From: Octopus sinensis
Taxonomy: Eukaryota
Direction: 5' to 3'
NCBI RefSeq assembly: GCF_006345805.1
Contig: NC_043010.1
Coordinates: forward strand, 24,180,001 to 24,244,000
DNA length: 64,000 bases
Below are positions 1 to 57,035 of this stretch, in pieces. Numbering within the stretch: position 1 is the first letter of the stretch; each line of letters starts with the position of its first letter. A model generated the notes under the pieces. The model was not told the origin of the DNA. It worked only from the letters and a program-made list of their open reading frames with translations, and searched no databases. The translations under genes and the position numbers were made by a program.

Positions 1-199
1 CCACTGTGTGGTGATTTGGCATGTGTCTTCTGCTGTAGCCTCAGACCAGCAAAAGCCTTCTCAGTGGAATTTGTACATATATACAGGCATACATACATAT
101 ATATACTTGCATACGTACATATTCGGCATAAACACTCTACCACTACAACGAATAGCTGTTGGGAACACTTTCAAACCTGCCTTACATTGGAACCGGAAT

Positions 200-3069
200 C
201 TCAACGCCCGAGTTTTCCATCTGAAGTTAATCTCTCTCATGGAGCTCATACAAAAAGGGCAAGTCTTTGGGCCCATACAATGTGACATGTACACAATCGA
301 GTGGCAAAAAAGGGGCCTTTCACATGCTCTTATCCTGCTTTGGCTCTCAGCGAAGATCAATTCCAATGACATCGACAAGATTATCTCTGCAGAGCTTCCT
401 GATCCAGCTTTAGACAAAGAACTATACGAAATAGTTAAAGTAAACATAGTACATGGTCCATGTGGGTATGGATTCAACATAAACTCACCATGCTTGAAGG
501 ACAGCATATGTTCAAAAAGATTTCCAAGGAGGTTCCTACAAGAAACTCAGACAGGTGCTGATGGGTATCCATCATACAGTCGCAGAAAACCAGAAAACGG
601 AGGTTTCACAGCAACTATCGGACAGCACAATATTGATAATAGATGGATTGTTCCATACTGCCCACTCCTGTCAAACACTTTCAATGCCCACATCAACGTT
701 GAGTTTTGCAACTCCGTTAAATCCATCAAGTACGTTTGCAAATATGTAAACAAGGGTTCTGACGCTGCAATGTTTGGACTTCAACAAGAATACTGCCAGG
801 ATGAGGTGACGCATTATCAGGTGGGACTGTACATAAGTAGCAACAAGGCTTTCTGGCGCATCTTTGGCTTTCCAATTCACCAACGACACCCCGCCATTCA
901 ACAGCTTGCAGTGCACCTGGAAAATGGTCAAAGAGTGTACTTCACCGATACTAATGCTTCTCTGTTGGCAGAGGAACCAAGGGATAGCACACGCACTGCA
1001 TTCTTCAAGCTTTGTCAAGTGGATCCATTCGCTCAAACCTTGCTGTATCCACAGATTCCATCGTACTACACTTGGAATGGAAAAAAATGGGCCCCACGGA
1101 AAGCAGGTCAAAATGTTCATGGATACCCTGGCATTAAGTTTCACACTTGTCTTGGGCGAGTATACACAGTGCATCCCACTCAACAAGAGTGCTTCTACCT
1201 TCGTCTACTACTGCATGAGGTCAGATGGCGAACGTCTTTCTAGGCCCTAAAAGCCGTTCATGGACATGTCTGCATAACATACAGAGAAGCCTGCTATCGA
1301 CAAGGTCTGTTAGAAGATGGTGCACAATGGGATTCAACTTTAGGAGAGGCTGCTTTATCACAATCACCTAAAAGTCTCAGGGCACTATTTGCAGTATTAC
1401 TACAGGCATGCGAACTGTGTGATCCGGCCACTCTATGGATCAAATATAGAGACAACCTGGCTGAAGACTTTCAGCGCCAAGCTCAACTGCTCTATCCTGA
1501 CATGGAGGGTATCAGTAATGAAATCTATAACAAAACACTCATTGACATTGAAGACAGAATTGCTAAACTGGGTGGAAATGAATTGTCGACGTATGGCCTG
1601 CCACAAGCATTCAGGTCAGGGTTAAAAAGCCTTCCCACCACTGTCATTCGTGAAACAACCTACGACACTCAAGCGCTTTCAAAGTACATTGTTGAAAATG
1701 AGCCTAAATTACTTCCGGACCAGCTGCAGGCCTACAGAACTATTCTTAACAGTGTACGCCAACGCGAGGGACGAATCTTCTTCCTCGATGCTCCTGGGGG
1801 GACAGTAAAAACATTTATTACAAAGCTTCTTGCAGAAGTTAGGCAGCATCTGGACATTGCAGTAGCTGTAGCCTCCTCTGGCATTGCAGCTACTTTGTTA
1901 CGCGGTGGCAGGACAGCACACTCACTTTTTAAACTCCTCAATTTAGCAGCATCCGAAATGCCTTCATGCAACATCAACAAAAGCTCAGATCAGGGACAAG
2001 TACTTAAAATGTGTTATCTAATTGTCTGGGATGAGTGCATTATGGCTCACAAGGGAGCTTTGGAAGCATTAGATAGAGCCCTGAAAGACATCCGAGACTG
2101 TTAGGCTCCAATGGGAGGTGTAACGCTTCTGTTGTCAGGTGATTTCAGGCAAACTCTTCCTGTCATTCCGAAAGGCAGTAGAACAGATGAAGTCCAAGCA
2201 TGCCTAAAGTCCTCTACCCTGTGGCATCATGTTACAATCCTCAGTCTCACCACTAACATGAGAGCTCAGCTACACGGCGACAAAATGTCCACAAAGTTTG
2301 TACAGGACATTTTGACACTTGGTGAAGGCAAGATGCCTCTCGATGCTGCAGGACAAATGGAAGTGTGGTCATTTTCCTCAGTTGTTAATTCTGTAGATGA
2401 CCTCAAAAACAAAGTCTTTCCCAATTTCACACAAAACTACCAAAATCACAATTGGCTGTGTGAAAGAGCAATATTAGCTCCAAAAAACGTCGCTGTTAAC
2501 AAAATTAATCAACAGCTAATGCATTCTCTTCCCGGCACTATACACACTTACAAGTCTGTTGATACAATTCCAGATATAAATGAAGTTGTGAACTATCCTC
2601 CTGAATTTCTCAATTCACTGGAGCCTCCTGGACTACCTCCACAAATATTAGCACTTAAAGTTGGAACTCCTGTAATGCTACTCCGCAATCTGGAACCACC
2701 AAGACTTTGCAATGGAACACGACTGGGGATAAAGAAAATGATATCACACGTTATCGAGGCGGTCATTCTTTCTGGATGTGGAAAAGGTGATGACGTCTAT
2801 ATTCCAAGATTTTCTCTTACTCCATCAGGAGCAGAAATTCCATTTACATTCAGAAGACTGCAATACCCCCTTTTCGTGTCAGCTTTGCCATGTCCATTAA
2901 CAAATCTCAGGGTCAAACCCTCTCTATAGCTGGTCTTCTCTTGGAAGAGCCCTGCTTCTCGCATGGGCAACTGTATGTTGGCTGCTCAAGAGTAGGAACC
3001 AAAAGAAACCTTTTTGTATATGCTCCACCAGGAAAAACAAGGAACATTGTTTACAACGAGGTGTTATAA
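200..3069 (+). pseudogene. Helitron Rep/PIF1-helicase, frameshifted
   Basis: Rep motifs EWQKRGLSHALIL (HUH second His lost) and KYVCKYVNKG. PIF1 motifs LDAPGGTVKT (Walker A G>V), VASSGIAATLL, WDEC, SGDFRQTLPV, ILAPKN, LLRNLEPPRLCNGTRL; after a frameshift FAMSINKSQGQTL...HGQLYVGCSRV. Stop TAA at 3067-3069. Confidence 0.95.
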
Positions 3070-3312: not shown

Positions 3313-3447
3313 TATATATATATATATATATATATATATGTCTGTGTGTATGTATGGATATATATATATATACATACATACAAACACACACACTGATATA
3401 GATAGGTAGATATATATATATATATATGATATGTATATATTTTTTTT

Positions 3448-3828
3448 TCTTGTTTCAGTCATTTTGACTGCGGCCATGCTGGAGCACCGCCTTTAATCGA
3501 GCAAGTCGACCCCGGGACTTATTCTTTTGTAATCCCAACACTTATTCTATCGGTCTCTTTTACCGAACCGCTAAGTTACGGGGACATAAACACACTAGCA
3601 TCGGTTGTCAAACACAGGGGGACAAACACAGACACACAAACATACACACACATATATATATACATATATACGACGGGCTTCTTTCAGTTTCCGTCTACAA
3701 AATCCACTCACAAGGCTTTGGTCGGCCCGAGGCTATAGTAGAAGACACTTGCCCAAGGTGCCACGCAGTGGGACTGAACTCGGAACCATGTGGTTGGTAA
3801 GCAAGCTACTTACCACACAGCCACTCCT
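3448..3828 (-). mobile_element. tRNA-derived SINE family A (CORE-like body, internal TA/TG microsatellite)
   Basis: Minus-strand head AGGAGTGGCTGTGTGGTAAGTAGC (A box) ... GAGTTCAGTCCC (B box), body GTGGCACCTTGGGCAAGTGTCTT resembling the CORE domain, tail ...CAGCATGGCCGCAGTC...GAAACA. Homologous to several other copies in the window. Confidence 0.9.
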
Positions 3829-5491: not shown

Positions 5492-6018
5492 TGTCGTAGA
5501 CTTGCTATGGGCACCTGTCCATACGGTATAACAGGAAAAAAAAAAAAAAGTGCCCCCACCTCCACCCCAAATACTGTCCTAAATACGGATGCATAAGAGG
5601 CAATGGATGCACCTTATTCCATCCTAAACTGTGCCAAACTTCTGTCTCACAAAGGATGTGCCTGAACCCAGAATGCAACCACCACCATCTGAAGGGCATA
5701 AAACGATCACAGAATAGATATAAACAGGAACAGAGGAAATCTAGGACAACAACAAGAACAAAATACAACCACGTCTCCCCTCCTACAATCAAACAACGTA
5801 GACAGAACCATGAAAAAACACCAAATAACGCCAACTTGAAATATGTATCCTCTGACCAAGTGGCAAACCAAACAAGCAACTCTTTTTTACTGACATACCT
5901 GGAAAATATGAAGGCCGACCTAAGCCAGGAGATCCAGCGAGCCATCACCAACCATCTATGCAAATCACAAGGACCACTCACCCATTACCAACTTCCCTTA
6001 CCTCGACATTCCTGTTAA
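5492..6018 (+). pseudogene. LINE ORF1 C-terminal part with three CCCH-like zinc fingers
   Basis: CRRLAMGTCPYGITG(K)n [frameshift in poly-A] CPHLH; CPKYGCIRGNGCTLFH; CQTSVSQRMCLNPECNHHH. Overlaps the ORF2 start. Confidence 0.7.
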
Positions 6019-8942
6019 ATGTACGTGGCATCAATCCATCAATTATTGCCCAAAAATGGAAGATCCCATATATAGAGAGTTGGCTTGCCGAAATGGCACA
6101 TTGCTTCCCTTTCTTTATCCTTACCGAGACTCACCTGAACAACACCCATATGGACGCAGAGGTGAAAATAAAAGATTTCACCATTGTTCGTGCGGATCGC
6201 ACAGACCGAAATAAGGGAGGGACAGCCATCTTTATCCATGACTCCTTTTCACTTGATGCCAAGGACACATTTTCCAATGGCTACTGTGAATCGGTATCAC
6301 TATACAACAAAGCCAAGGACATAACCATTGATGGTCTTTACAGGCCTCCCCAGGCACCTCTAAAGTACTTTGAAGAGTGCCTTAGCAAAGTCAAGTCCTT
6401 CCTTCGGAAGTACCACTCCGGAAACATACTAGTAATGGGTGATTTTAACCTCCCTCATGTGAACTGGCCTACAAATACTCCGAAGTTAGGCAAGTGCTCT
6501 ACATCAGAACTGCTCTTTAATCTGATGGATGAGTATTTCCTGACTCAGCTAGTGCTTGAACCAACGAGACAGAATAAAACGATCTTGGATCTGGTATTGA
6601 CCAATCACTCTAGCTACGTTCACAGCATTTCAGTCGAAAAAACTCTCCTCTCAGACCACGACATGGTACTCTGCAATCTTAATTCCCGACATATAAAAAC
6701 CAAACCAGCCAATCCCACTCCATGGCACCCATTTGACAACATAAACTTCCACAAAGCGGACTGGGGAACAATCAGAAAGGATCTGTCTTCCATCGACTGG
6801 TCTTTTACTCTCAATTCCCCTCATATTGAGACCGCGTGGCAGCACTTTGAAACCATTGTCACCTATACATGCTCCAAACACGCTCCCAAGAAATCTATTA
6901 ACACAAACAAAAACCGGCTCCCTAAAAAGAAAAAAAAACACTCATCAGGCGCATCAAAAGACTCAACAAAAAAATCAACCAATTAAAATATTTCCACACA
7001 CAACATCCACATTCAACAACAATGAAAAGACTAGAGCTGGAAAAACTTCATCTGCAGACTAACATGAAAACCTCCATTGAAAATCAAAGAGCTGTGGAGG
7101 AACAATGGGTAATCAAAAACATCAAACAGAACCCAAAAGTGTTCTATTCTTATGCAAATAAGCATAGAACCACTGTCTCACCCATTGGGCCATTGATTGA
7201 TGATAACGGCTTTCCCCAACACGATGCTAAAGAAATGGCAGAAATACTGCAGAAACAATACTGATATTAACGTGAAGGAAACGAACGAAGTTGACTCCCA
7301 ACACAAAATCGCAGACATAACCTTCACTGCCAAAGACATCGTAGTAGCAATAAATGAGGTCAAGCATTACTCTGCTGTAGGCCCTGATAGATTTCCCGCT
7401 AGTCTCCTGAAGGAATGTAGATATCAACTTGCAGTCCCTCTGACCAACCTCTGGAGAAACTCGTTAGACGCAGGTTATATACCGAAACAGTTTCTATCCC
7501 AGTCGGTCATCCCGGTTTTCAAACAGGGAAACAGATCCCTCGCAGTCAACTATCGCCCAATCTCACTCACCTCCCACATCATTAAAGTGTTTGAAAGAGT
7601 GTTAAGATCAAGGATAGCTGACTTCCTGGAGACCCACAAACTCCTAAATTCAAATCAGCATGGCTTTCGCTGTGGCAGGGACTGTCTAACACAGCTCTTA
7701 CACCACATTGAAGATGTACTCAAAGCCTTGGGAACAGGTTCGAACTCTGACGTCATATATCTTGACTTCAGTAAAGCGTTCGACAGGGTAGACCATAACA
7801 TCCTACTCTCGAAATTGGCAAATGTTGCAATCCGTGGAAAAGTTCTACACTGGATTAAGTATTTCCTGGCGAATAGAACGCAACATGTTGTAGTTGATGG
7901 AGTCCACTCAAACCCAGCAAAAGTCACCAGCGGTGTTCCCCAGGGAACTGTTTTGGGTCCGCTACTCTTCATAATTTACGTAAACGACCTTTCCAGTGTC
8001 GTACATCACTGCAAAGTGAAAATATTCGCTGATTACCCTAAGCTCCAGCAAATCGTCAATGAAGAAGTAGACCGAACTCAACTCCAGTCTGATCTATATG
8101 CTGTGAGTCAATGGGCAGACAGAAACAAAATGCAACTGAATGAGGGAAAATTTGAGCTGATGCATTTTGGAAGAAATTCCTCACTAAAACAACCATACTC
8201 TCTTCCTTCAGGGGAACCGCTCACAGCCTCTAACAATATCAGAGACCTGGGTGTAATTGTTGATGACGATCTCAGTTGGAGTGCACACATCAACAAGAAG
8301 GTTGATATAGCTCGTAGGATGAGTTCCTGGATCTTAAGAACTTTCCGGTCCTGAGAACAAGGTGTCATCATACCACTTTTTTCCTCCTTTGTACGGCCAC
8401 ACCTTGAATACTGCTGCCCACTGTGGTCTCCTCACACAACACAAAACATCTCCAGAATTGAGTCACCCCAGAGGACTCTCACTAAACAAATTGAAGGCAT
8501 GGCTGCTCTCGATTATTGGGATCGCCTTAAAACCTTGAAACTTTACTCCCTCCAGCGTCGCCGTGAGCGGTACATCATTTGTACGATGTGGAAAATATAC
8601 CGCCAACTTTGCCCAAACGACCTAAACATTAGCTTCAAGGTCCATCCAAGACTTGGACCACGGGCTATACGTCCCCTGCCAAATTCAAGATCACAACATA
8701 CATGTACACTGCAACATAATTTCTTTTCCTCAACAGGCCCTGCCCTATTTAACATTGTCCCGAGGGAGATCAAAGAGGAAAAGGATCCCATCAATTTTAA
8801 ACAGAGTCTGGATAGATTCCTTCAAAGAATACCAGATAAGCCACCCATAATTGGATACAACTCACCCAACGAGAACTCACTACTTGAACAAAACTGGATA
8901 CAACTCACCAAACAAGAACTACTTGAACAAAACTTGACTTAA
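5958..8942 (+). pseudogene. LINE ORF2 (APE endonuclease + reverse transcriptase)
   Basis: APE: LLNVRG, LTETHL, LYRPP, MGDFNLP, LDLVLTN, SDHD. RT: NYRPISLTS, QHGFR, YLDFSKAFDRVDH, SGVPQGTVLGPLLF, FADY (catalytic D lost). Frameshifts near 6935 and 7260; TGA at 8352. Confidence 0.95.
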
Positions 8943-8984
8943 ACAGGATTCGAATATATATATATATATATAATATATGTATGC

Positions 8985-13110: not shown

Positions 13111-13542
13111 AAGAAGGCGGCGTACTGGCAGGAACGTTAGCACGCCGGGCGAAATGCTTAGCGGTATTTCGTCTGCCGTTACGTTCTGAGTTCAAATTCC
13201 GTCGAGGTTGACTTTACCTTTCATCCTTTCGGGGTCGATTAAATAAGTACCAGTTATGCATTGGGGTCGATGTAATAGACTTAATCCGTGTGTCTCCTTG
13301 TTTGTCGCCTCTATGTTTAGCCCCTTGTGGGCAATAAAGAAATAAGAAACATTAACATGCCGGGCGAAATGCTTAGTGGTATTTCGTCTGTCTTTATGTT
13401 CCGAGTTCAAATTCTGTAGAGGTCGTATTTGCCATTCATTCTTTCGGGGTCGATAAATTAGGTACCAGTTGCGAACTGGGGTTGCTCTTATTGACTGGCC
13501 ACCTCCCCAAAATTTTCGGGCCTTGTGCCTAGGGTAGAAAAG
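13111..13542 (+). mobile_element. tRNA-derived SINE family B, dimer with 13-bp TSD
   Basis: Two head-to-tail units (CGGGCGAAATGCTTAG...GAGTTCAAATTC B box...GTACCAGTT). AATATTTGCGAGT at both 13098-13110 and 13543-13555. Confidence 0.9.
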
Positions 13543-14136
13543 AATATTTGCGAGTTAGCTCGATCAGGTGATTATGTTGGTGGTGTGGTTCCCATCGTCT
13601 TTTCGTCTCCTATTCCAAACTTTCATCAAAATACATAATCGAGGAACCTATCATGTACTATATGCTTCCAATTCTGATAGCATCCGTCTTTGAACGAGAG
13701 CGAGGGAGAGAGAGAAACAGACAGACAGAAATATATAGAGAGAGAGCAAGAAAAGGAGCGACATTCAGTCAATTTGCATTTGACCACGAATCAATATATT
13801 CTAATCGACTTGTCACGTGAGACGCTGCACCTTCTTGTTTATCAAATATTTCTTCCAGATAATGTCTGGCAACAAGTCCATTTCGTGTACCAGAATTTCA
13901 AGACAGGTATAATTTGTGAGGTTATTTTGAAATAGTTTCTAAGTAAATCATTTTACTCTCGACAACGGAGCAAATTGAATAGCCAGCAATCATTTTCCAC
14001 CAACTTGTAAGATTCCATGATTAATATAAAGGCGTTATAGATTTTCGTCAATGTATGTGTTAAGAATGTTCGATGCCAAATATGTTAATAGGTTAACACA
14101 GCTCCACTTGCAAGGAAATACTATTGATATGAGATT

Positions 14137-18526: not shown

Positions 18527-18800
18527 AACCAGCCGCTCTCAGGACTGCCTCCAAGTATCGATGGTCTACCCTATCGAAAGCTTTCGATTGATCTAAATTG
18601 ATCAGGGCCCCACCCATGCCAGGTTCCTTAACATACTCTGTCCATGATGTAGCGCATCAGATGGAGGTTGTCATGGATACTCCGGCCCGGCACGGCGCAC
18701 GTTTGCGCCTTGTCGACCAGTTTCTCGATGACAAGCGCCAACCTCTTGGCTAACACTTTGGTCAAAATTTTCAGGTCTGCATTGAGCAGAGTGATGGGCA
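18527..18800 (-). pseudogene. L1/Tx1-clade reverse transcriptase fragment
   Basis: PITLLNADLKILTKVLAKRL...AQTCAVPGRSIHDNL...ALINLDQSKAFDRVDHRYL, with a frameshift. Confidence 0.88.
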
Positions 18801-18871: not shown

Positions 18872-20146
18872 GAAGGTACATATTTTTATATAACATATAT
18901 GTGGAATCTTTGGGGGAGGGGCGATTGTGTCTCGAAGATACAAGCAGTAGCTGTAAACAAACAATAGTTGTAAATGTACTTTGGGAGCCAACCCCCTGAT
19001 TTATTCCACATTCCCCCGATAGTTCATGGATTCGTATGACATCAACACCTTAGTTTTTCTAAACCCTGTAAACGAACTCGAAAGTTTGGACCTCCAACCA
19101 GGCCTTTCGCAAGCCCTTAAAGCCAGGGACTTTTCTGCACCCTCTCGTGTATATCTATGTACACATATGTGCGCGTACGTACGTGTGTGCGTGCGTGTGT
19201 GTTCTGCTTGATTTTGTACCCGCCACTACTTGACAACTGGTGTTGGTGTGTGTGCGTATGTGTGCGTGTATAAATATGCGAGTATTTATTGGAAATGTTG
19301 CTTTAATAATTAAATTGAGAGAAAAATTCACACAAATGCTTCATAGTATGTTTCTTTATTGGCCACACAGCTCTGAACCAGCCGTCAGATCTACGTTGGT
19401 TCATATATTTTCCTGTGAAATTATTAATTTTCTTAATAATTTCAGAGGGGACAAAAGAAGAGAAAAAAAAGTGGGTCGAATTTCGATCAAAAGGTATCGT
19501 GGAAAAAAAAGCCGATCAATTGAGATCGTGTATCACAGAAATATCAATGTAAAAAGGGAAAACAGATTAGGCTTACCCGTGGAAAGAAAAGCCTACTGAA
19601 AAGAGCACGGTAACCTTGGGCAATAATATCATGCAAAAACATTACAGTATGTGACTTTCTTTTTTCCTTTCCTTTTCTGGTTCATAGAATTATGCTGAAG
19701 CTTGCTCCGTCATTCACACATGCCATCCTTGCTACATTTACACATCTTTTTTTGAAACATTCACTAGACAAAACTTCCCTCTCTACTCTCACCTTCCTCT
19801 TCAAGTGATACTTGAAGAAGTTGATGAGAGATTGACCAGTGAGGAAAGTGTTTGTCTCTAGACCTTTCAGTCGCATCCACCCTACATATTATTTTGCCAT
19901 AGACACAAATACGATGGAAATGGCTCTTCCTTCCCGTTTCAAGGAAGGAGGCACAACAATATTGACGATAGACTCGGTTGATAAACCGACTCGGCCCGCA
20001 CGCGATAGTAGTCGTTCGACATTGGCTCACAGGTCGGAAATGGTTGGACACAGTACAAGTTAAGAATTAATCTTCGTCACTGTTAATAAGCAGAATTTTA
20101 TAAAACATAACCCAAAGAAAGAACACACGCAAGTCAAACACAATTC

Positions 20147-28582: not shown

Positions 28583-31000
<2,418 letters not shown>

Positions 31001-52390: not shown

Positions 52391-52487
52391 TGCCCCAGCA
52401 TGGCCGCAGTTTAATGGCTAAAACAAGTAAAAACTAAAAGAATAATCTCTTTGGAAGATACCTATTTTGATTGTCCCCTCGTCTATT

Positions 52488-52564
<77 letters not shown>

Positions 52565-52565
<1 letters not shown>

Positions 52566-52953
52566 CTTTTTACTCTTTTACTTGTTTCAGTTATTTGACT
52601 GTGGCCATGCTGGAGCACCGGCTTTAATCGAGCAAATCCCTCCCCCCGGACTTATTCTTTGTAAGACTAGTACTTATACTATCGGTCTGTTTTGCCGAAC
52701 CGCTAAGTTACGAGGATGTAAACACACCAGCATCGGTTGTCAAGCGATATTGGAGGGGCAAACACAGACACACAAACATATACACACACATACATATATA
52801 TATACATACATACGACGGGCTTCTTTCAGTTTCCGTCTACCAAACGCACTCACAAGGCTTTGGTCGGCCCGAGGCTAAATTAGAAAACACTTGCCGAAGG
52901 TGTCACGCAGTGGGACTGAATCCGGAACCATGTGGTTCGTAAGCAAGCTACTT
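52565..52953 (-). mobile_element. SINE family A body and tail; head displaced to 56362-56400
   Basis: Matches 3448-3812 and stops at GTAAGCAAGCTACTT. Confidence 0.92.
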
Positions 52954-55281
52954 TATTTCATAACATTTGCCATAAAGGGAGTACATAGAGTAAGTTAGCT
53001 TTGCGGCTGGACGAGGACATTAATGAAATGAATGATAATGAAAAAAGATGATGGGGATGGGAGAAGACAAAAGCGCCCCGCCGACTTCTGCTTCTCTAAA
53101 ACATTGTTCTTTTAAAAACAACCAAAAACGAGGTATTAAACCTCTTACAATTTTACAACTTTTCAATTTTTGGACTTAACAGTCGATTACTAACAACAAC
53201 ATAGTTCAATAGTTACATATGATATAAATACAATACACAAAGCCCCTCCTCCCAGACCTGGCTTACACTTCCCTTAGGAATGCGCCAGTCGTATCACAAT
53301 TTATGACTCGTCCTCAAAATAACTTGTGCCCGCACCCTCCGCCATCCACCACGCCTCCCTCAGAATGTAATCGAGTTCTGTGTTAGCGTTGCCCGGGACC
53401 AAGCTATAATCCTCATTGAGCTCCTTCAGCCCAAGCATCACGTCGAACTTCACGGCCTCCACAGCTACCTGCGGAGGCCATTCGGGGTCCTGTGTGAAGG
53501 CTAAAGGTGCTCCCTTGTGGTGCTTTTCCGTCACCTTTTCAATCTCTCCGCCTCTATGGAAGAGGATCAATATATCGTTTTTGTTCGGGTGCGGGATATT
53601 CAATTCTTTCGTTGGCGGCACAGTTCCCGCCAACGGTGTTTCTTCTCCTGTCGGTGGCAAAACCTCGACCGACGTAGTTCCGGGACATTCCGGTACTATG
53701 TCACCGACTGCTGGTAATGTCCCGTTTCTCTTCCTCTTTTTCTTTTTTTTCTTTTCAACTGAGGGAGGGTGCGTCTCCTCCGTGGCTGGAAGATTCGCCT
53801 TTCCCTCCTCATCCCTAGTATCCTTTGGTGAGCACCCATTGTTGCTCACGTTCCTCTTTCGGCCTCTGTTTGAGGAGTCCTCCGCTTTCTCGGCCGTTTT
53901 CATTTAACTGTTCCGGGATCCTATTTTGTTCCCGGGGACAGTTCTTCTTTATATGGCCGGACTCCAAGCACCGATGACACTTAGGGGGGCGACCCTCAAG
54001 CATTACCGGGTACCTGCACCCGCCCATTTTCAAAAAATCTGGAAGAACCAGATTGGCTGATTGGGTCCAAAGGGTCAAAATTGCTTTTGACCCAACCCAA
54101 GCAGCCGCAGGAAAAACTTTCACATTAAGCAGCTTAGTTTCGCTGCTACCCAGACCCCGGCGGATAGTCTCCTCTATCCACTCGGGTTTTATCCCGGGTG
54201 GCAGCCCGCAGATCCAAGCTTTCGTCAGTCTCTTTTTTTGGTACGTGGGCAGGAATAAAATTTCCTTACCCTCCAGGGGTTTACTAGCAATTTGCAAGCC
54301 TCTTCAGGGTGTCAAATAGCAACCCACGTTGCATATCTAACACCCCTGGAAATGAATTTAATTGTTGGCAAATACTCTGCCAACCCCTTTTCAATTGCTG
54401 TCTTTTCGAATAGGGCGATGGTGTCGAGTGCCTTGGAGTAGGTTCTCAACACCACCGTCCTATCTTCACGGTCTTTTAACCACTTTTTAGGCGGTATAAT
54501 CTCCCATTCCAAAATTTTGTCATTTTTCATTGCCATGTTTTTTTTTTTAAATATATTCAAAATAAACTTAAAAAGCGAGAAGAAAAAAAGTTCAAAAGTC
54601 CAAATAAAATTCGATAGATTTTTTGAAAAAACAAAAAGGAGAAAGCACAACAGAAGGGAAGAAATCAACGGAAAGTCGCAATAAACAAAAAAACAAAAAG
54701 GGGAGTTAAATGAAGTTCAAAAGATAGTCAATAAACAGCAAAACACAGCAAAAATCTTCTGGCCTTACGGTACTCCGGCTTGAGTTGAACCTGGAACGCC
54801 GCAACTGGAACACAACCTCCACAAAAATTGGTCCAAAAGGTAATTCAAAAGTGGCTTATTCTTATAATTTTCTTGCGAGATACTCCGACAAAGGAATCAA
54901 TTTTTCGGCCGAAAAGGTACTCCTGGCTGCCCAATGGTAAAATAAATTCAACAAAACCAACCACAGCACTGGCCACCGCCAACGGTAATTTTAACAGTAA
55001 CTGTATTGGGTTCCGAGGATACGCCCCTCCACTTTTTTTTTTTTTTTTTTCAATAAACACAAAAACAGCAGCCGCCGAGAGCAGGTGAAATTGTCCCAGA
55101 GCTGGACACAACCTACTGAAAAAATAATTAGCACGTAATAAATTATGCCCAACTCACAACAAACAAAATCACTCACCTCGACTACTTTCTGTTTTTGGTC
55201 TTTTTTCTGTAATTGGACGGAGCTAGCTAACTCACGTCCATTCTGGGTCAACAGGAAGCAACTGACTAACAGCGCATGTGC
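52954..55281 (-). mobile_element. ORF1-only (HAL1-like) non-LTR element E1, 2328 bp
   Basis: Flanked by 15-bp direct repeats. Long 5' UTR, L1/Tx1-type ORF1, ~350-bp 3' UTR ending ...CTTTATGGCAAATGTTATGAAATAAA. No APE or RT sequence seen. Confidence 0.82.
53301..54536 (-). pseudogene. L1/Tx1-type ORF1 (RRM-like region, CCHC knuckle, C-terminal extension)
   Basis: DRTVVLRTY...FISRGVRYATW, WICGLPPGIKPEWIEE, EGRPPKCHRCLESGHIKKNC (CX2CX4HX4C). Frameshifts near 54300 and 53905. Confidence 0.85.
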
Positions 55282-55296
55282 GTTAGCAAGCTACTT

Positions 55297-56361
55297 TATT
55301 TTATCAGATTTGCCATAAAGGCAGTACACAGATGGGACACTACAACACATGTGGGGACATATAACAATTAAAAAATAAAATATGATATAATGGATGAACA
55401 TGAAAATGCACATGAAGAATAAATTAAAATATGATAATATCAATGATATCTGAAAATGATATTATGAAAAGTGTGCTACTCACCCCACATTGAGTAACAC
55501 AACTCGCTGTCTCTGGGTCCTGAGTCCTTTTTCTCTTTTCGTTCAATCCCGTTACTTGATGGTAACCTTCTCTCCGTCATGCATTCATAACCTTTTTTGC
55601 CGGGAGGGGGGGTCTTCTAAATTTTGTGATGTCTGTTCTTTTTTTCTTTTTTTTCTTGAGGGGAAATGGGGTGGGTGGGTTTGGTGTCTGTATGGGGAGG
55701 GTGAGTCTGAGTGGTCTTGGGTGGGAAGGGGTTGGACTGGGGTGCCACATCATACTCAGTGTCTTTTCTTTTTTTCTCTTTCTTCTTGTGCGCTCTGCAA
55801 CTTTCCATTCCTCCTTTTCATCGCTTCCTTCGTCTATTTTTTCTTTTTCCTCTTTTTTCTCTTCTGTCTCCGTAACCACATTGCCTCTTCAGCTGTCCTA
55901 AATTGGACAATCATTGTTCCGTATCTTTTTCCTTTTGTGATGTATGTGTTTTCTTTTGACCTCTCTCTTAGCGCTCTTTCTGTATCTGCTTCCACCTGTT
56001 CAGCCCTTTTTCCTTTTAAAGGGAACACCTTTTAGGTGATAGTCTTTCTTTCTATCTTCTCCATGATTCCTTTGGGGGGCGACAGTCTTGCGTCCCCTCC
56101 CACGTTCTGTGGCATCTTGCCATGGTTTTTCAAACCAGCCAAGTCCAACTCCTTTCGTCTCTTCTCCATGACTTCTGCAAAACTCTTGTTCTTTTCAAGC
56201 ATACTGTCCATTGCTATGACCGCCCTCACGAGCTCCTCCTCTGAAGACAACTCAGACCCGGTAAGGTCTGAGTACATTGTCTCACCGCAGCAACAAAACC
56301 GACGTCCGACTCGCACACAAACGATAAACCAAATGCACTATGGGTAACCGGAAGCAAGCTG
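55297..56361 (-). mobile_element. Related deleted element E2, 1065 bp
   Basis: ORF remnant ERKTIT*KVF...YITKGKRYGTMIVQFRTAEEA, homologous to the E1 N-terminus. 3' 36 nt are 31/36 identical to E1; flanked by GTTAGCAAGCTACTT. Confidence 0.78.
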
Positions 56362-56400
56362 GTTAGCAAGCTACTTACCACACAGTCACTCCTGCGCCTA
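56362..56400 (-). mobile_element. Displaced 5' head of the split SINE A
   Basis: Sense TAGGCGCAGGAGTGACTGTGTGGTAAGTAGCTTGCTAAC matches intact heads at 3797-3828 and 41325. Confidence 0.9.
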
Positions 56401-56439
56401 TTCTTATCATTATTATCCTCATCATTATTATTATTATTA

Positions 56440-57035
56440 AGATGGCGAGCTAGCAGAATCGTTAGCACGCTGGACAAATACTTAGCGACATTACAATCTG
56501 TGTTCCAATTCCGTCGAGGTCGACTTTACCGCTTATCCTTTTGGGGGTCATGAGATTTAGTAATAGTCAAGCACTGGGCTCGATGAAATGGACGACAACC
56601 TTCCCACGAAATTTCAGGAATTGTTCCAATTGTAGGAAGGATTTTTTTTAATGGCTTGCTGGCAGAAGTAGTAGCGCGTCGGGCAAAAACGTTTTCACGT
56701 TCTGAGTTCAAATTTCGCGGAGTTCGACTTTGCGCTTCATATTTTCGAGGTCGATCAAATAAGTACCAATCGAGTACTGGAATCGATGTAATCGATTTCC
56801 CCTCTCCTCGAAAATGCTGGCCTTGTGCCAAAATTTGAAACCATTATTTAACGTAGCGAGCTTATAGAATCGTTAGCCCACCGGACAAGGTAATAACAGG
56901 AAATTTCGTCCGTGTTTGCGTTCTGAGTTTAAATTACTCCGCAGCTGAATTAAATACCAATCAAATACTCGGGTTGATGTAATCGATTCAATCCCTTCCT
57001 TGAAAACTGCTTCCGCTGTGCCAAAATTTGAAGCC
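56440..57035 (+). mobile_element. Three tandem SINE family B monomers
   Basis: Heads at ~56440, 56652 and 56853; the last two end ...GTGCCAAAATTTGAA(A/G)CCATTATT. Confidence 0.82.

What the first reader, a model, noticed from the sequence alone, without database searches (positions are those of the whole stretch)
52565..56400. Two ORF1-only retroelements inserted in tandem at the same site of a SINE head: candidate SINE-targeting non-autonomous Tx1 system
Seen: one SINE-A copy is split, with its body at 52565-52953 and its head at 56362-56400. Between them lie two elements (E1 2328 bp, E2 1065 bp) in the same orientation as the SINE. Three copies of a 15-bp SINE segment bound them: GTAAGCAAGCTACTT (52939), GTTAGCAAGCTACTT (55282) and GTTAGCAAGCTACTT (56362). 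E1 and E2 share a 3' terminus (31/36 nt, ending AATAAA), a 5' motif CAG(C)TTGCTTCC(T/G)GTT(G)ACCC and homologous ORF1 N-termini. Neither shows endonuclease or RT sequence. Known: HAL1 elements are ORF1-only L1 derivatives; Tx1-clade elements include sequence-specific families (Tx1L/Tx2L into DNA transposons, Keno into U2, Mutsu into 5S rDNA, Dewa into tRNA arrays). Inference: two different elements hitting one site suggests a sequence-specific endonuclease cutting GTGTGGT|AAGTAG between the A and B boxes, with the abundant SINE as landing pad. The T variant shared by two of the repeats implies E1 inserted first and E2 then re-used the regenerated 5' site.
Basis: partly seen in the sequence, partly recalled or inferred. 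Interest (0 to 1): 0.88.

Follow-up and report, generated by a model that had tools for sequence, protein, structure and literature searches.

The report
Two ORF1-only retroelements stacked in SINE
One octopus SINE copy is split at a single nucleotide position by two different protein-coding but enzyme-less relatives of an L1/Tx1-type LINE; this is a real and tidy case of repeated same-site insertion, but the behaviour is already known for Tx1-type elements that target other transposons.

Summary
A minus-strand tRNA-type SINE ("SINE-A") is split into a head (56399-56362) and a body (52953-52565). Between them lie E2 (1065 bp) and E1 (2328 bp), both in the SINE's orientation. Three copies of AAGTAGCTTGCT(A/T)AC bound them. 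Intact SINE-A copies read straight through this site.

E1 and E2 are different elements, not duplicates. They share only a 3' end (31/36 nt) and a short 5' motif. Both carry decayed reading frames of a protein family whose named members are all octopods, with two RRM-like domains and a CCHC knuckle. In full-length relatives from Octopus sinensis, O. vulgaris and Argonauta this protein is ORF1. It sits just upstream of an endonuclease, reverse transcriptase and zf-RVT ORF2 whose best solved match is human LINE-1 ORF2p. E1 and E2 have no ORF2.

The shared 3' end also ends those LINEs, other ORF1-only elements and the window's second SINE.

Preference for SINE-A is supported but not proven. Two further E1-family copies in O. 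sinensis start right after a SINE-A head at the same position. Their 3' sides are not in a SINE body.

Tx1 families that target other transposons, tandem insertions with a duplication between them, and ORF1-only HAL1 elements are all published. I rate this a new variant of a known kind, of moderate interest.

The parts
56362..56399 (-). SINE-A head (tRNA-type 5' part). Its last 15 nt are copy 1 of the target-site duplication.
   Evidence: It aligns with the heads of intact SINE-A copies.
56362..56376 (-). Target-site duplication, copy 1: AAGTAGCTTGCTAAC
55297..56361 (-). E2: a 1065-bp, heavily decayed, internally deleted ORF1-only element.
   Evidence: It shares only its termini with E1. No ORF2.
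55834..56277 (-). E2 ORF1 remnant: the N-terminal region and the start of the first RRM-like domain (...YITKGKRYGTMIVQFRTAEEA), broken by a stop. The CCHC part is missing.
   Evidence: tblastn with P0003 gives 39% over 74 aa, E 1e-7. It aligns within A4.
56349..56360 (-). AGCTTGCTTCC at nt 2-12 of E2: a near-copy of the SINE-A target core. I read it as a captured target-site fossil.
   Evidence: In the window and L001-L005 (about 150 kb) the motif occurs only in SINE-A target sites and in E-type leaders.
55282..55296 (-). Target-site duplication, copy 2: AAGTAGCTTGCTAAC, lying between E2 and E1.
52954..55281 (-). E1: a 2328-bp ORF1-only element with a 745-nt 5' UTR, ORF1 and a 347-nt 3' UTR.
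55235..55281 (-). E1 5' leader: an NRF1-like palindrome (GCACATGCGC), then AGTTGCTTCC (target-like fossil), then the AATGGACGTG motif shared with the 5' end of the autonomous relative in L003.
53301..54536 (-). E1 ORF1, about 410 codons, with two RRM-like domains, a CCHC knuckle and a C-terminal domain. It is broken by one in-frame TGA (54314-54312) and two frameshifts (near 54270 and within 53900-53865).
   Evidence: 68% identical to O. sinensis LOC115225585.
53935..53982 (-). CCHC zinc knuckle of E1 (CHRCLESGHIKKNC).
   Evidence: Pfam zf-CCHC, E 0.0024, below the curated cut-off. Cysteines of the knuckle are invariant or nearly invariant in family alignments (C192 and C202 in A3; nearly invariant in A4); the histidine is not.
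52954..52989 (-). E1 3' terminus (...CCCTTTATGGCAAATGTTATGAAATAAA), the presumed recognition tail. The E2 counterpart is 55297-55332.
52939..52953 (-). Target-site duplication, copy 3: AAGTAGCTTGCTTAC, which matches the SINE consensus.
52565..52953 (-). SINE-A body and tail, followed by an (ACT)n microsatellite.

Best explanation
E1 and E2 are non-autonomous, ORF1-only descendants of an octopod LINE lineage of the L1/Tx1 type. E2 is badly decayed and internally deleted. Each entered the same nucleotide position of one SINE-A copy, in the SINE's orientation, by target-primed reverse transcription (TPRT).

Shown:
- The first insertion duplicated 12-15 bp of the SINE.
- The second insertion used one of the two regenerated copies and duplicated it again. 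This gives head, duplication, E2, duplication, E1, duplication, body.

Inferred:
- Neither element encodes an endonuclease or reverse transcriptase. Those must be supplied in trans by autonomous relatives.
- The supplying enzyme probably recognises the conserved 3' terminus CCyTTrTGGc...AATAAA(G), which E1 and E2 share with those LINEs and with SINE-B.
- The site is probably chosen by sequence. The likely contributors are the preference of the partner's endonuclease for ...GGTAA|GTAGCTTGCTTAC| and base-pairing. The element ends in its AATAAA signal, so transcripts from a copy sitting in SINE-A should run a few bases into GUAGCUUGC. That end could pair with the nicked strand of another SINE-A copy.
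- The AG(C)TTGCTTCC motif in the 5' leaders is a target-site sequence captured in an earlier round. This would point to a long association with SINE-A.
For: Nesting and duplication:
-.

E1 and E2 are different elements:
- blastn finds only the 36-nt 3' end in common.

The frames are LINE ORF1:
- The E1 frame hits O. sinensis LOC115225585 (P0001) at 68% identity, E 3e-90.
- phmmer of P0001 finds 47 relatives; every one of the 20 looked up that carries a species name is an octopod.
- The same protein lies immediately upstream of an ORF2 in L003 (O. sinensis), L004 (O. vulgaris) and L018 (Argonauta). Pfam finds Exo_endo_phos, RVT_1 and zf-RVT on the L003 and L004 ORF2s; the L018 ORF2 was identified by tblastn similarity (about 52-54% to L004's) only.
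- The best solved relative of that ORF2 is human LINE-1 ORF2p at E 1e-61, against 1e-25 for R2.
- The ORF1 model (pLDDT 84) matches tandem-RRM proteins.

No ORF2 in E1 or E2:
-.

The ORF1-only layout recurs:
- E1-family copies in L001 and L002, and other families in L005 and L017.

The 3' terminus is shared:
- L003, L004, L018 and L019 LINEs, the L005 element, and the SINE-B tail at window 13113-13345.

Same-site preference:
- The E1-family copies in L001 and L002 lie at unrelated loci.
- Both begin directly after a complete SINE-A head that stops at the same position...GTAGCTTGCTTCC|TGTGCATGCG and ...GAAGTTTGCTTCC|ACTGCGCATGTGCG.
- The target-like motif in the leaders is described.

Precedent:
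- Tx1-Mar and SINEU-3 insert into Mariner-N4_AMi with a 16-bp duplication and 'tandem insertions sandwiching a TSD' (PMC4494074).
Against: - The L001 and L002 copies are not followed by a SINE-A body. L001 is truncated inside ORF1, and L002 ends next to a (TG)n tract. Only two of four insertions are therefore documented on both sides.
- No autonomous element with the E1/E2 tail variant (CTTTATGGCAAAT) was found.
- Other group members end in unrelated flanks or in microsatellites.
- Head-to-tail stacking is common in this LINE group wherever it sits (L004, L019, L020, SINE-B). Re-use of a site does not by itself prove specificity for SINE-A.
- Tx1 clade membership was not tested by phylogeny.
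Confidence: 0.68

Rival explanations
1. Stacking without any SINE specificity. One element landed in this SINE-A copy by chance. The second landed beside it because elements of this LINE group tend to integrate at the ends of resident relatives, or at a site regenerated by the duplication. SINE-A is incidental.
For: - Head-to-tail arrays of full-length LINEs occur away from SINE-A. L004 has three near-identical copies. L019 has at least three copies of different subfamilies. L020 has two different families separated by an identical 19-mer.
- SINE-B copies are also stacked.
- Most group 3' ends seen are not in SINE-A.
Against: - Two further E1-family copies, at unrelated loci, start at exactly the same SINE-A position and in the same orientation.
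- The E1, E2 and L001 leaders carry a near-copy of the SINE-A target core.
- The chance of hitting one of about 850 position-and-orientation states again and again is negligible.
Confidence: 0.17
2. The SINE-A head is a 5' leader carried by the E1 family. It would have been gained by 5' transduction from a master copy or by template switching onto SINE RNA, like the U1/U2 heads of some Tx1-Mar families. On this view the L001 and L002 junctions are not independent target hits. Only the window locus would be a real insertion into a SINE.
For: - The L001 and L002 copies have a complete head upstream and no SINE body downstream.
- There is a published precedent for target- or snRNA-derived 5' heads on Tx1 elements (PMC4494074; PMC4758252).
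Against: - In the window, E1 is preceded by only the 13-15 nt duplication, not by a head.
- E1 is followed by the SINE body, which resumes at exactly the duplicated bases.
- The L001 copy is plainly truncated at its 3' side, so the missing body there tells us nothing.
- The heads in the three loci belong to different SINE-A variants (TAAC against TTCC).
Confidence: 0.12
3. Local tandem duplication or assembly artefact.
For: There are three identical or near-identical 15-mers in 3.4 kb. No read-level data are available.
Against: - E1 and E2 share no sequence apart from 36 nt at the 3' end and a 20-nt 5' motif.
- Their reading frames belong to different subfamilies.
- The layout matches sequential TPRT exactly.
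Confidence: 0.03

Closest known systems
Tx1-Mar LINEs and SINEU-3 in crocodilians (Kojima 2015, PMC4494074)
   Same: - APE-type LINEs of the L1/Tx1 group, plus non-autonomous passengers, that insert into a particular position of another abundant transposon.
- A fixed duplication of about 16 bp.
- Tandem insertions with a duplication between them.
- Target- or snRNA-derived sequence captured at element 5' ends.
   Different: - The target here is a tRNA-type SINE, not a Mariner DNA transposon.
- The passengers here are ORF1-coding elements, not SINEs.
- Here the preference rests on 4 junctions, not on hundreds.
- The autonomous partner has not been identified.
HAL1 (half-L1) elements of mammals (from my own knowledge, not checked in a paper here)
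   Same: Non-autonomous LINE derivatives that keep ORF1 and the UTRs but lack ORF2. They amplify as a family using ORF2 protein supplied in trans.
   Different: - HAL1 derives from mammalian L1, whose ORF1 has a coiled coil, an RRM and a C-terminal domain. It ends in poly(A) and has no site specificity.
- The octopod ORF1 has two RRM-like domains and a CCHC knuckle. The element ends in a specific tail, not in poly(A).
Tx1L in Xenopus and other sequence-specific Tx1-clade families: Keno (U2), Kibi (TC)n, Koshi (TTC)n (cited in PMC4494074)
   Same: A two-ORF, APE-type LINE whose families each pick a repeated target. Tx1L inserts into another transposon, Tx1D.
   Different: - Clade membership of the octopod elements was not tested by reverse-transcriptase phylogeny.
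- Using a SINE as target was not reported in the three papers I read (full-text searches returned nothing on it).
LINE and SINE pairs with a common 3' tail (Ohshima and Okada, cited in PMC4758252)
   Same: The conserved 3' terminus is shared by the autonomous LINEs, SINE-B and the ORF1-only elements. This implies recognition of the tail by the reverse transcriptase.
   Different: Here three tiers share one tail: the LINEs, the ORF1-only elements and a SINE.

Membership tests
LINE-derived ORF1-only non-autonomous element (HAL1-like in architecture) | The reading frame is homologous to the ORF1 of autonomous LINEs. | tested here: met
   E1 and E2 match the protein family. The same family is the ORF1 directly upstream of the endonuclease and reverse-transcriptase ORF2 in L003, L004 and L018.
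LINE-derived ORF1-only non-autonomous element (HAL1-like in architecture) | No endonuclease or reverse-transcriptase coding sequence between ORF1 and the 3' end. | tested here: met
   tblastn with the L004 ORF2 finds nothing in 52954-56361. Pfam finds only zf-CCHC.
LINE-derived ORF1-only non-autonomous element (HAL1-like in architecture) | The 3' terminus is shared with an autonomous LINE. | tested here: met
   The CCyTTrTGGc..AATAAA(G) motif lies at the ends of the L003, L004, L018 and L019 LINEs and of E1 and E2. The similarity is at motif level. No partner with the exact variant was found.
LINE-derived ORF1-only non-autonomous element (HAL1-like in architecture) | The ORF2-less form has itself multiplied, so it is a family and not a single deletion. 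| tested here: met
   For E1: three diverged copies (72-78% identity) at unrelated loci, none with an ORF2; the L001 copy is truncated inside ORF1, so it does not show the ORF1-to-3'-end layout. For E2: only one copy was seen, so this is not shown.
Tx1 clade of non-LTR retrotransposons | The reverse-transcriptase domain groups with Tx1 references in a phylogeny. | not testable with these tools
   No reference LINE set was available. Indirect support only: the best solved match is L1 ORF2p, a zf-RVT domain is present, and L1-Tx1 families are annotated in O. vulgaris (PMC13282606).
Tx1 clade of non-LTR retrotransposons | Two ORFs: an ORF1 with RNA-binding domains and CCHC, and an ORF2 with an N-terminal APE endonuclease and a reverse transcriptase. 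| tested here: met
   Shown in the autonomous relatives: L003 and L004 by Pfam, L018 by tblastn only. ORF1 fold.
Sequence-specific (target-specific) non-LTR retrotransposon | Most copies sit at one position and in one orientation of a defined target sequence. | tested here: inconclusive
   Four of four 5' junctions are at the same SINE-A position. Only two of four 3' junctions are. A genome-wide survey was not possible.
Sequence-specific (target-specific) non-LTR retrotransposon | The target-site duplication is constant in sequence and length, and tandem insertions have a duplication between them. | tested here: met
   Three copies of AAGTAGCTTGCT(A/T)AC. The same hallmark is described in PMC4494074.
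Sequence-specific (target-specific) non-LTR retrotransposon | The endonuclease cleaves the target sequence specifically. | not testable with these tools
   The partner endonuclease is unidentified. This needs a biochemical assay.

The most novel reading that the evidence does not exclude
An octopod lineage of ORF1-only, Tx1-type non-autonomous retrotransposons has specialised on one position of an abundant tRNA-derived SINE as a safe landing pad. In this reading it borrows the endonuclease and reverse transcriptase of a still unidentified SINE-specific autonomous LINE, and it has absorbed target-site sequence into its own 5' leader. That would be the first LINE-family parasite known to target a SINE, and the first HAL1-like tier found within a sequence-specific LINE group.
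Probability: 0.45. Interest if true: 0.55.

Novelty: new variant of a known kind. Interest (0 to 1): 0.45.

Why it matters
If a genome-wide survey confirms the preference, three things follow:

- It adds a SINE to the list of targets used by sequence-specific L1/Tx1-type elements.
- It shows a three-tier mobilisation system sharing one 3' tail: autonomous LINE, ORF1-only element and SINE.
- It would identify an endonuclease with a defined 12-15 bp staggered cut site in a sequence with many genomic copies. That is useful for studying how APE-type endonucleases gain specificity.

It also bears on annotation. SINEs and LINEs together make up about a quarter of the O. vulgaris genome (PMC13282606). 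Nested stacks like this one can be mis-called as genes. P0001 and P0002 are examples of such gene models.

If the preference is not confirmed, this is simply a well-resolved transposon nest.

Tried and rejected
- **Profile protein searches.** Two searches with alignments A3 and A4 returned almost nothing, so no further E1- or E2-like proteins were obtained that way.
- **Metagenome scan for the 3' junction.** The pattern AATAAAGTAGCTTGCTNAC gave five chance hits in microbial contigs and no octopus DNA.
- **Exact look-up of the E1 200-aa frame.** It is not on record, so the orthologous locus and presence/absence data were unavailable.
- **tRNA and RNA family scans.** ARAGORN and Rfam on the window found nothing. 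The tRNA origin of the SINE head and the A-box and B-box positions rest on reading the sequence only.
- **The two endonuclease and reverse-transcriptase LINEs in the window** (5958-8950 on the plus strand; 33939-30958 on the minus strand). I rejected them as partners. They have different tails, Exo_endo_phos_2-type endonucleases and no family ORF1 upstream.
- **E2 as a duplicate of E1.** Rejected.
- **The 17 nt GCACATGCGCTGTTAGT as untemplated filler between the duplication and E1.** Rejected, because the L001 and L002 copies carry the homologous leader.
- **A SINE body hidden downstream of the L001 and L002 copies.** Not found, even with 7-nt words and several SINE subfamilies as queries.
Full report
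**1. What is in the sequence**

The window is eukaryotic. It holds SINEs, LINEs, a Helitron-like gene and many microsatellites. Every named protein match is from an octopod.

On the minus strand the region reads as follows:

- SINE-A head, 56399..56362, ending ...GTGTGGTAAGTAGCTTGCTAAC.
- E2, 56361..55297, running from CAGCTTGCTTCCGGTTACCC to CTTTATGGCAAATCTGATAAAATAAA.
- A second GTAGCTTGCTAAC.
- E1, 55281..52954, running from GCACATGCGCTGTTAGTCAGTTGCTTCCTGTTGACCC to CTTTATGGCAAATGTTATGAAATAAA.
- GTAGCTTGCTTAC, running straight on into GAACCACATGG... and the rest of the SINE body down to 52565.

Intact SINE-A copies elsewhere in the window read through this point without a break (alignment A1). 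Head joined to body aligns colinearly with the intact copy at 3444-3828. The split, the two inserts and the triplicated 12-15 bp are therefore real. The SINE and the elements both end in AAG, so the 3' boundary is uncertain by 2-3 nt.

**2. E1 and E2 are different elements**

blastn finds only the 36-nt 3' end in common, 31 of 36 nt identical. The pattern describing that end occurs nowhere else in 64 kb, against 0 expected. A local duplication is excluded.

**3. What they encode**

E1 carries a frame of about 410 codons (54536..53301). It is broken by one TGA and two frameshifts. Its first 229 codons are 68% identical to O. sinensis LOC115225585 (P0001, E 3e-90).

An exhaustive phmmer search with P0001 finds 47 relatives at 22-36% identity. 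Every one that carries a species name comes from Octopus sinensis, O. vulgaris, O. bimaculoides or Argonauta hians. The family shares the pattern ...RGKxYGT...EEA...PxYxGRR...PP...VEGRxPxCxxCGxxGHxKxxCP (A4).

An AlphaFold model of the conserved region has pLDDT 84 and pTM 0.71. It matches tandem-RRM proteins such as NONO/SFPQ, raver1, Prp24 and IMP3 RRM12. Pfam sees only the CCHC knuckle.

E2 keeps just the N-terminal part and the start of the first RRM-like domain. It matches P0003 at 39% over 74 aa and P0027 at E 4e-11. E1 and E2 are not significantly similar to each other. Their homology shows only through the family.

**4. The protein is a LINE ORF1**

The genomic loci of family members settle this.

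- **L003, O. sinensis.** ORF1 (P0003) is followed 40 nt later by MANLRIGCLNVRGL..., then Exo_endo_phos, RVT_1 and zf-RVT.
- **L004, O. vulgaris.** Three near-identical full-length copies. One has a 993-aa frame (RVT_1, zf-RVT and a sub-threshold match to the end of the endonuclease domain) that lacks the N-terminal ~66 endonuclease residues found in another frame. Its best solved relative is human LINE-1 ORF2p at E 1e-61, against 1e-25 for R2.
- **L018, Argonauta hians.** The same layout by tblastn similarity of ORF1 and ORF2; Pfam was not run on it.

This is the L1/Tx1-type architecture. L1-Tx1 families are annotated as recently active in O. vulgaris (PMC13282606). I could not run a reverse-transcriptase phylogeny, so 'Tx1 clade' remains a good guess and is not a result.

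**5. E1 and E2 lack ORF2, and this layout recurs**

tblastn with the L004 ORF2 finds nothing inside E1 or E2. Two more E1-family copies also have 5' UTR and ORF1 with no ORF2 nearby. They are 72-78% identical and lie at loci whose flanks are unrelated (L001, L002). More distant families in L005 and L017 are ORF1-only as well. This is the HAL1 idea arising in another LINE group.

**6. One tail, three tiers**

The E1/E2 terminus belongs to a conserved 3' end, CCyTTrTGGc...AATAAA(G). It closes each of the following:

- the autonomous LINEs (L003 CAGCCCTTGTGGCCAATAAAAAG; L004 GGCCCCTTGTGGGTAAATAAA; L018 GTGTGCCCTTGTGGCGAATAAAG; L019);
- the ORF1-only L005 element;
- a decayed ORF2 remnant at window 19352 on the minus strand;
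- the other abundant SINE in the window, SINE-B, for example 13113-13345.

The simplest reading is recognition of the tail by the reverse transcriptase, with all three tiers mobilised by the same enzymes. This is an inference.

**7. Is SINE-A a chosen target?**

*For.*

- There are two independent events at the same nucleotide in the window.
- The L001 and L002 copies each begin directly after a complete SINE-A head that stops at the same position and in the same orientation. The heads are different SINE-A variants.
- The leaders of E2 (nt 2-12), E1 (nt 19-28) and the L001 copy contain AG(C)TTGCTTCC. In the window and L001-L005 (about 150 kb) this string otherwise occurs only at SINE-A target sites of the GCTTCC variant. 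It looks like target sequence captured in an earlier cycle. Kojima describes the same thing for 5' extensions and snRNA heads of Tx1-Mar and SINEU (PMC4494074).

*Against.*

- Neither L001 nor L002 shows a SINE body after the element. L001 is truncated inside ORF1. L002 ends next to a (TG)n tract.
- Head-to-tail stacking is a general habit of this group. L004 has three copies. L019 has at least three copies of different subfamilies. L020 has two different families with an identical 19-mer before the first copy and between the two. SINE-B is stacked too.
- Other members end in microsatellites or in unrelated DNA.

I put about 0.6-0.7 on a real preference of the E1 and E2 lineages for this SINE-A site. 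I put about 0.95 on the plain nested-insertion reading.

**8. Order of insertion**

The two 5' copies of the duplication carry A. The 3' copy carries the consensus T. 'E1 first, then a T-to-A change, then E2' needs one change. 'E2 first' needs two. This is a one-base argument and stays weak.

**9. How it compares with what is known**

Tx1-clade families with sequence preference include Tx1L into the piggyBac derivative Tx1D, Keno into U2 genes, and Kibi and Koshi into microsatellites. [quoted passage not shown] The architecture found here is that hallmark.

Two things differ. The target is a tRNA-type SINE, and the passengers still code for ORF1. Full-text searches returned no report of either in cephalopods.

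**10. Verdict**

The feature is real and cleanly resolved. Its nature is now clear: ORF1-only derivatives of an L1/Tx1-type LINE, stacked at one SINE site. In kind it is not new. The SINE-targeting claim is plausible and cheap to test genome-wide, but it was not testable with the collections available here.

Noticed in passing
window 13113-13550 (+) and 56440-57000 (+): A second SINE (SINE-B, head GGCAGRAWCGTTAGCACGCCGGGCGAAATGCTTAGCGG) ends in the same conserved tail as E1, E2 and the LINEs (...AGCCCCTTGTGGGCAATAAAG). Its copies lie head to tail. One such stack sits directly beside the split SINE-A head.
   Followed up: partly
L004 1-13026 (O. vulgaris OX597840.1); L019 (O. sinensis CM016867.1); L020 (O. 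bimaculoides CM046605.1): Full-length LINEs of this group form head-to-tail arrays. L004 has three near-identical copies with a 5.28-kb period and short spacers that resemble the left flank. L019 has at least three copies of different subfamilies. L020 has two different families, with the identical 19-mer TTTTTCAAACAGCTGGTCG before the first copy and between the two.
   Followed up: partly
L003 4700-4790 and 10340-10380; window 56400-56440 and 52470-52565: The L003 autonomous LINE has (ATT)n on both sides. The split SINE-A copy itself also sits inside (AAT)n and (ACT)n microsatellite sequence. Some members, and perhaps SINE-A, may prefer TAA-type microsatellites.
   Followed up: no
L005 5600-5935 and 7658-7700; L017 5330-5960; L020 5370-5780: The elements in L017 and L020 are preceded by homologous sequence (about 75% identical) that contains long inverted repeats; L005 also has an upstream inverted repeat, but blastn found no similarity to the other two. 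The L005 3' flank resembles the L020 19-mer. These families may target another repeat. Alternatively this sequence may be part of their 5' UTR.
   Followed up: partly
window 55266-55281 (-); L001 5493-5505; L002 11742-11757: The extreme 5' end of the E1 family carries an NRF1-like palindrome (GCGCATGCGC-like). It may be an internal promoter element. A similar motif followed by AGAATGGGAC occurs at L001 7538-7560.
   Followed up: no
window 29300-31000 (-): The endonuclease and reverse-transcriptase LINE at 33939-30958 (minus strand) is followed by about 480-bp tandem repeats, at least three and a half units.
   Followed up: no
window 8-2929 (+): A Helitron-like gene (Helitron_like_N, PIF1 helicase, Pif1 2B domain) split over three frames.
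   Followed up: no
L002 6001-32638 (O. sinensis gene model P0002, 'K02A2.6-like'): This annotated protein is a chimaera of transposon pieces. One exon is the N-terminus of an E1-family ORF1. The last exon is an integrase (rve) fragment. P0001 (LOC115225585) is likewise a truncated E1-family ORF1.
   Followed up: partly
L006-L011 (Logan contigs from runs SRR11869384-94): Contigs of about 1.7 kb from six sequencing runs carry the same 294-aa family ORF1 (P0007). Five of them place the ORF at the same offset (253-1137), and four are 1690-1703 bp long. No ORF2 lies in the 560 nt downstream. They look like transcripts of an ORF1-only element. The species is unknown.
   Followed up: no
window 18540-18798 (-) and 19350-20059 (-): Decayed fragments of a Tx1-type ORF2 of the same group. 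The second ends in CAGAGCTGTGTGGCCAATAAAG at about 19352, next to unrelated flank.
   Followed up: partly
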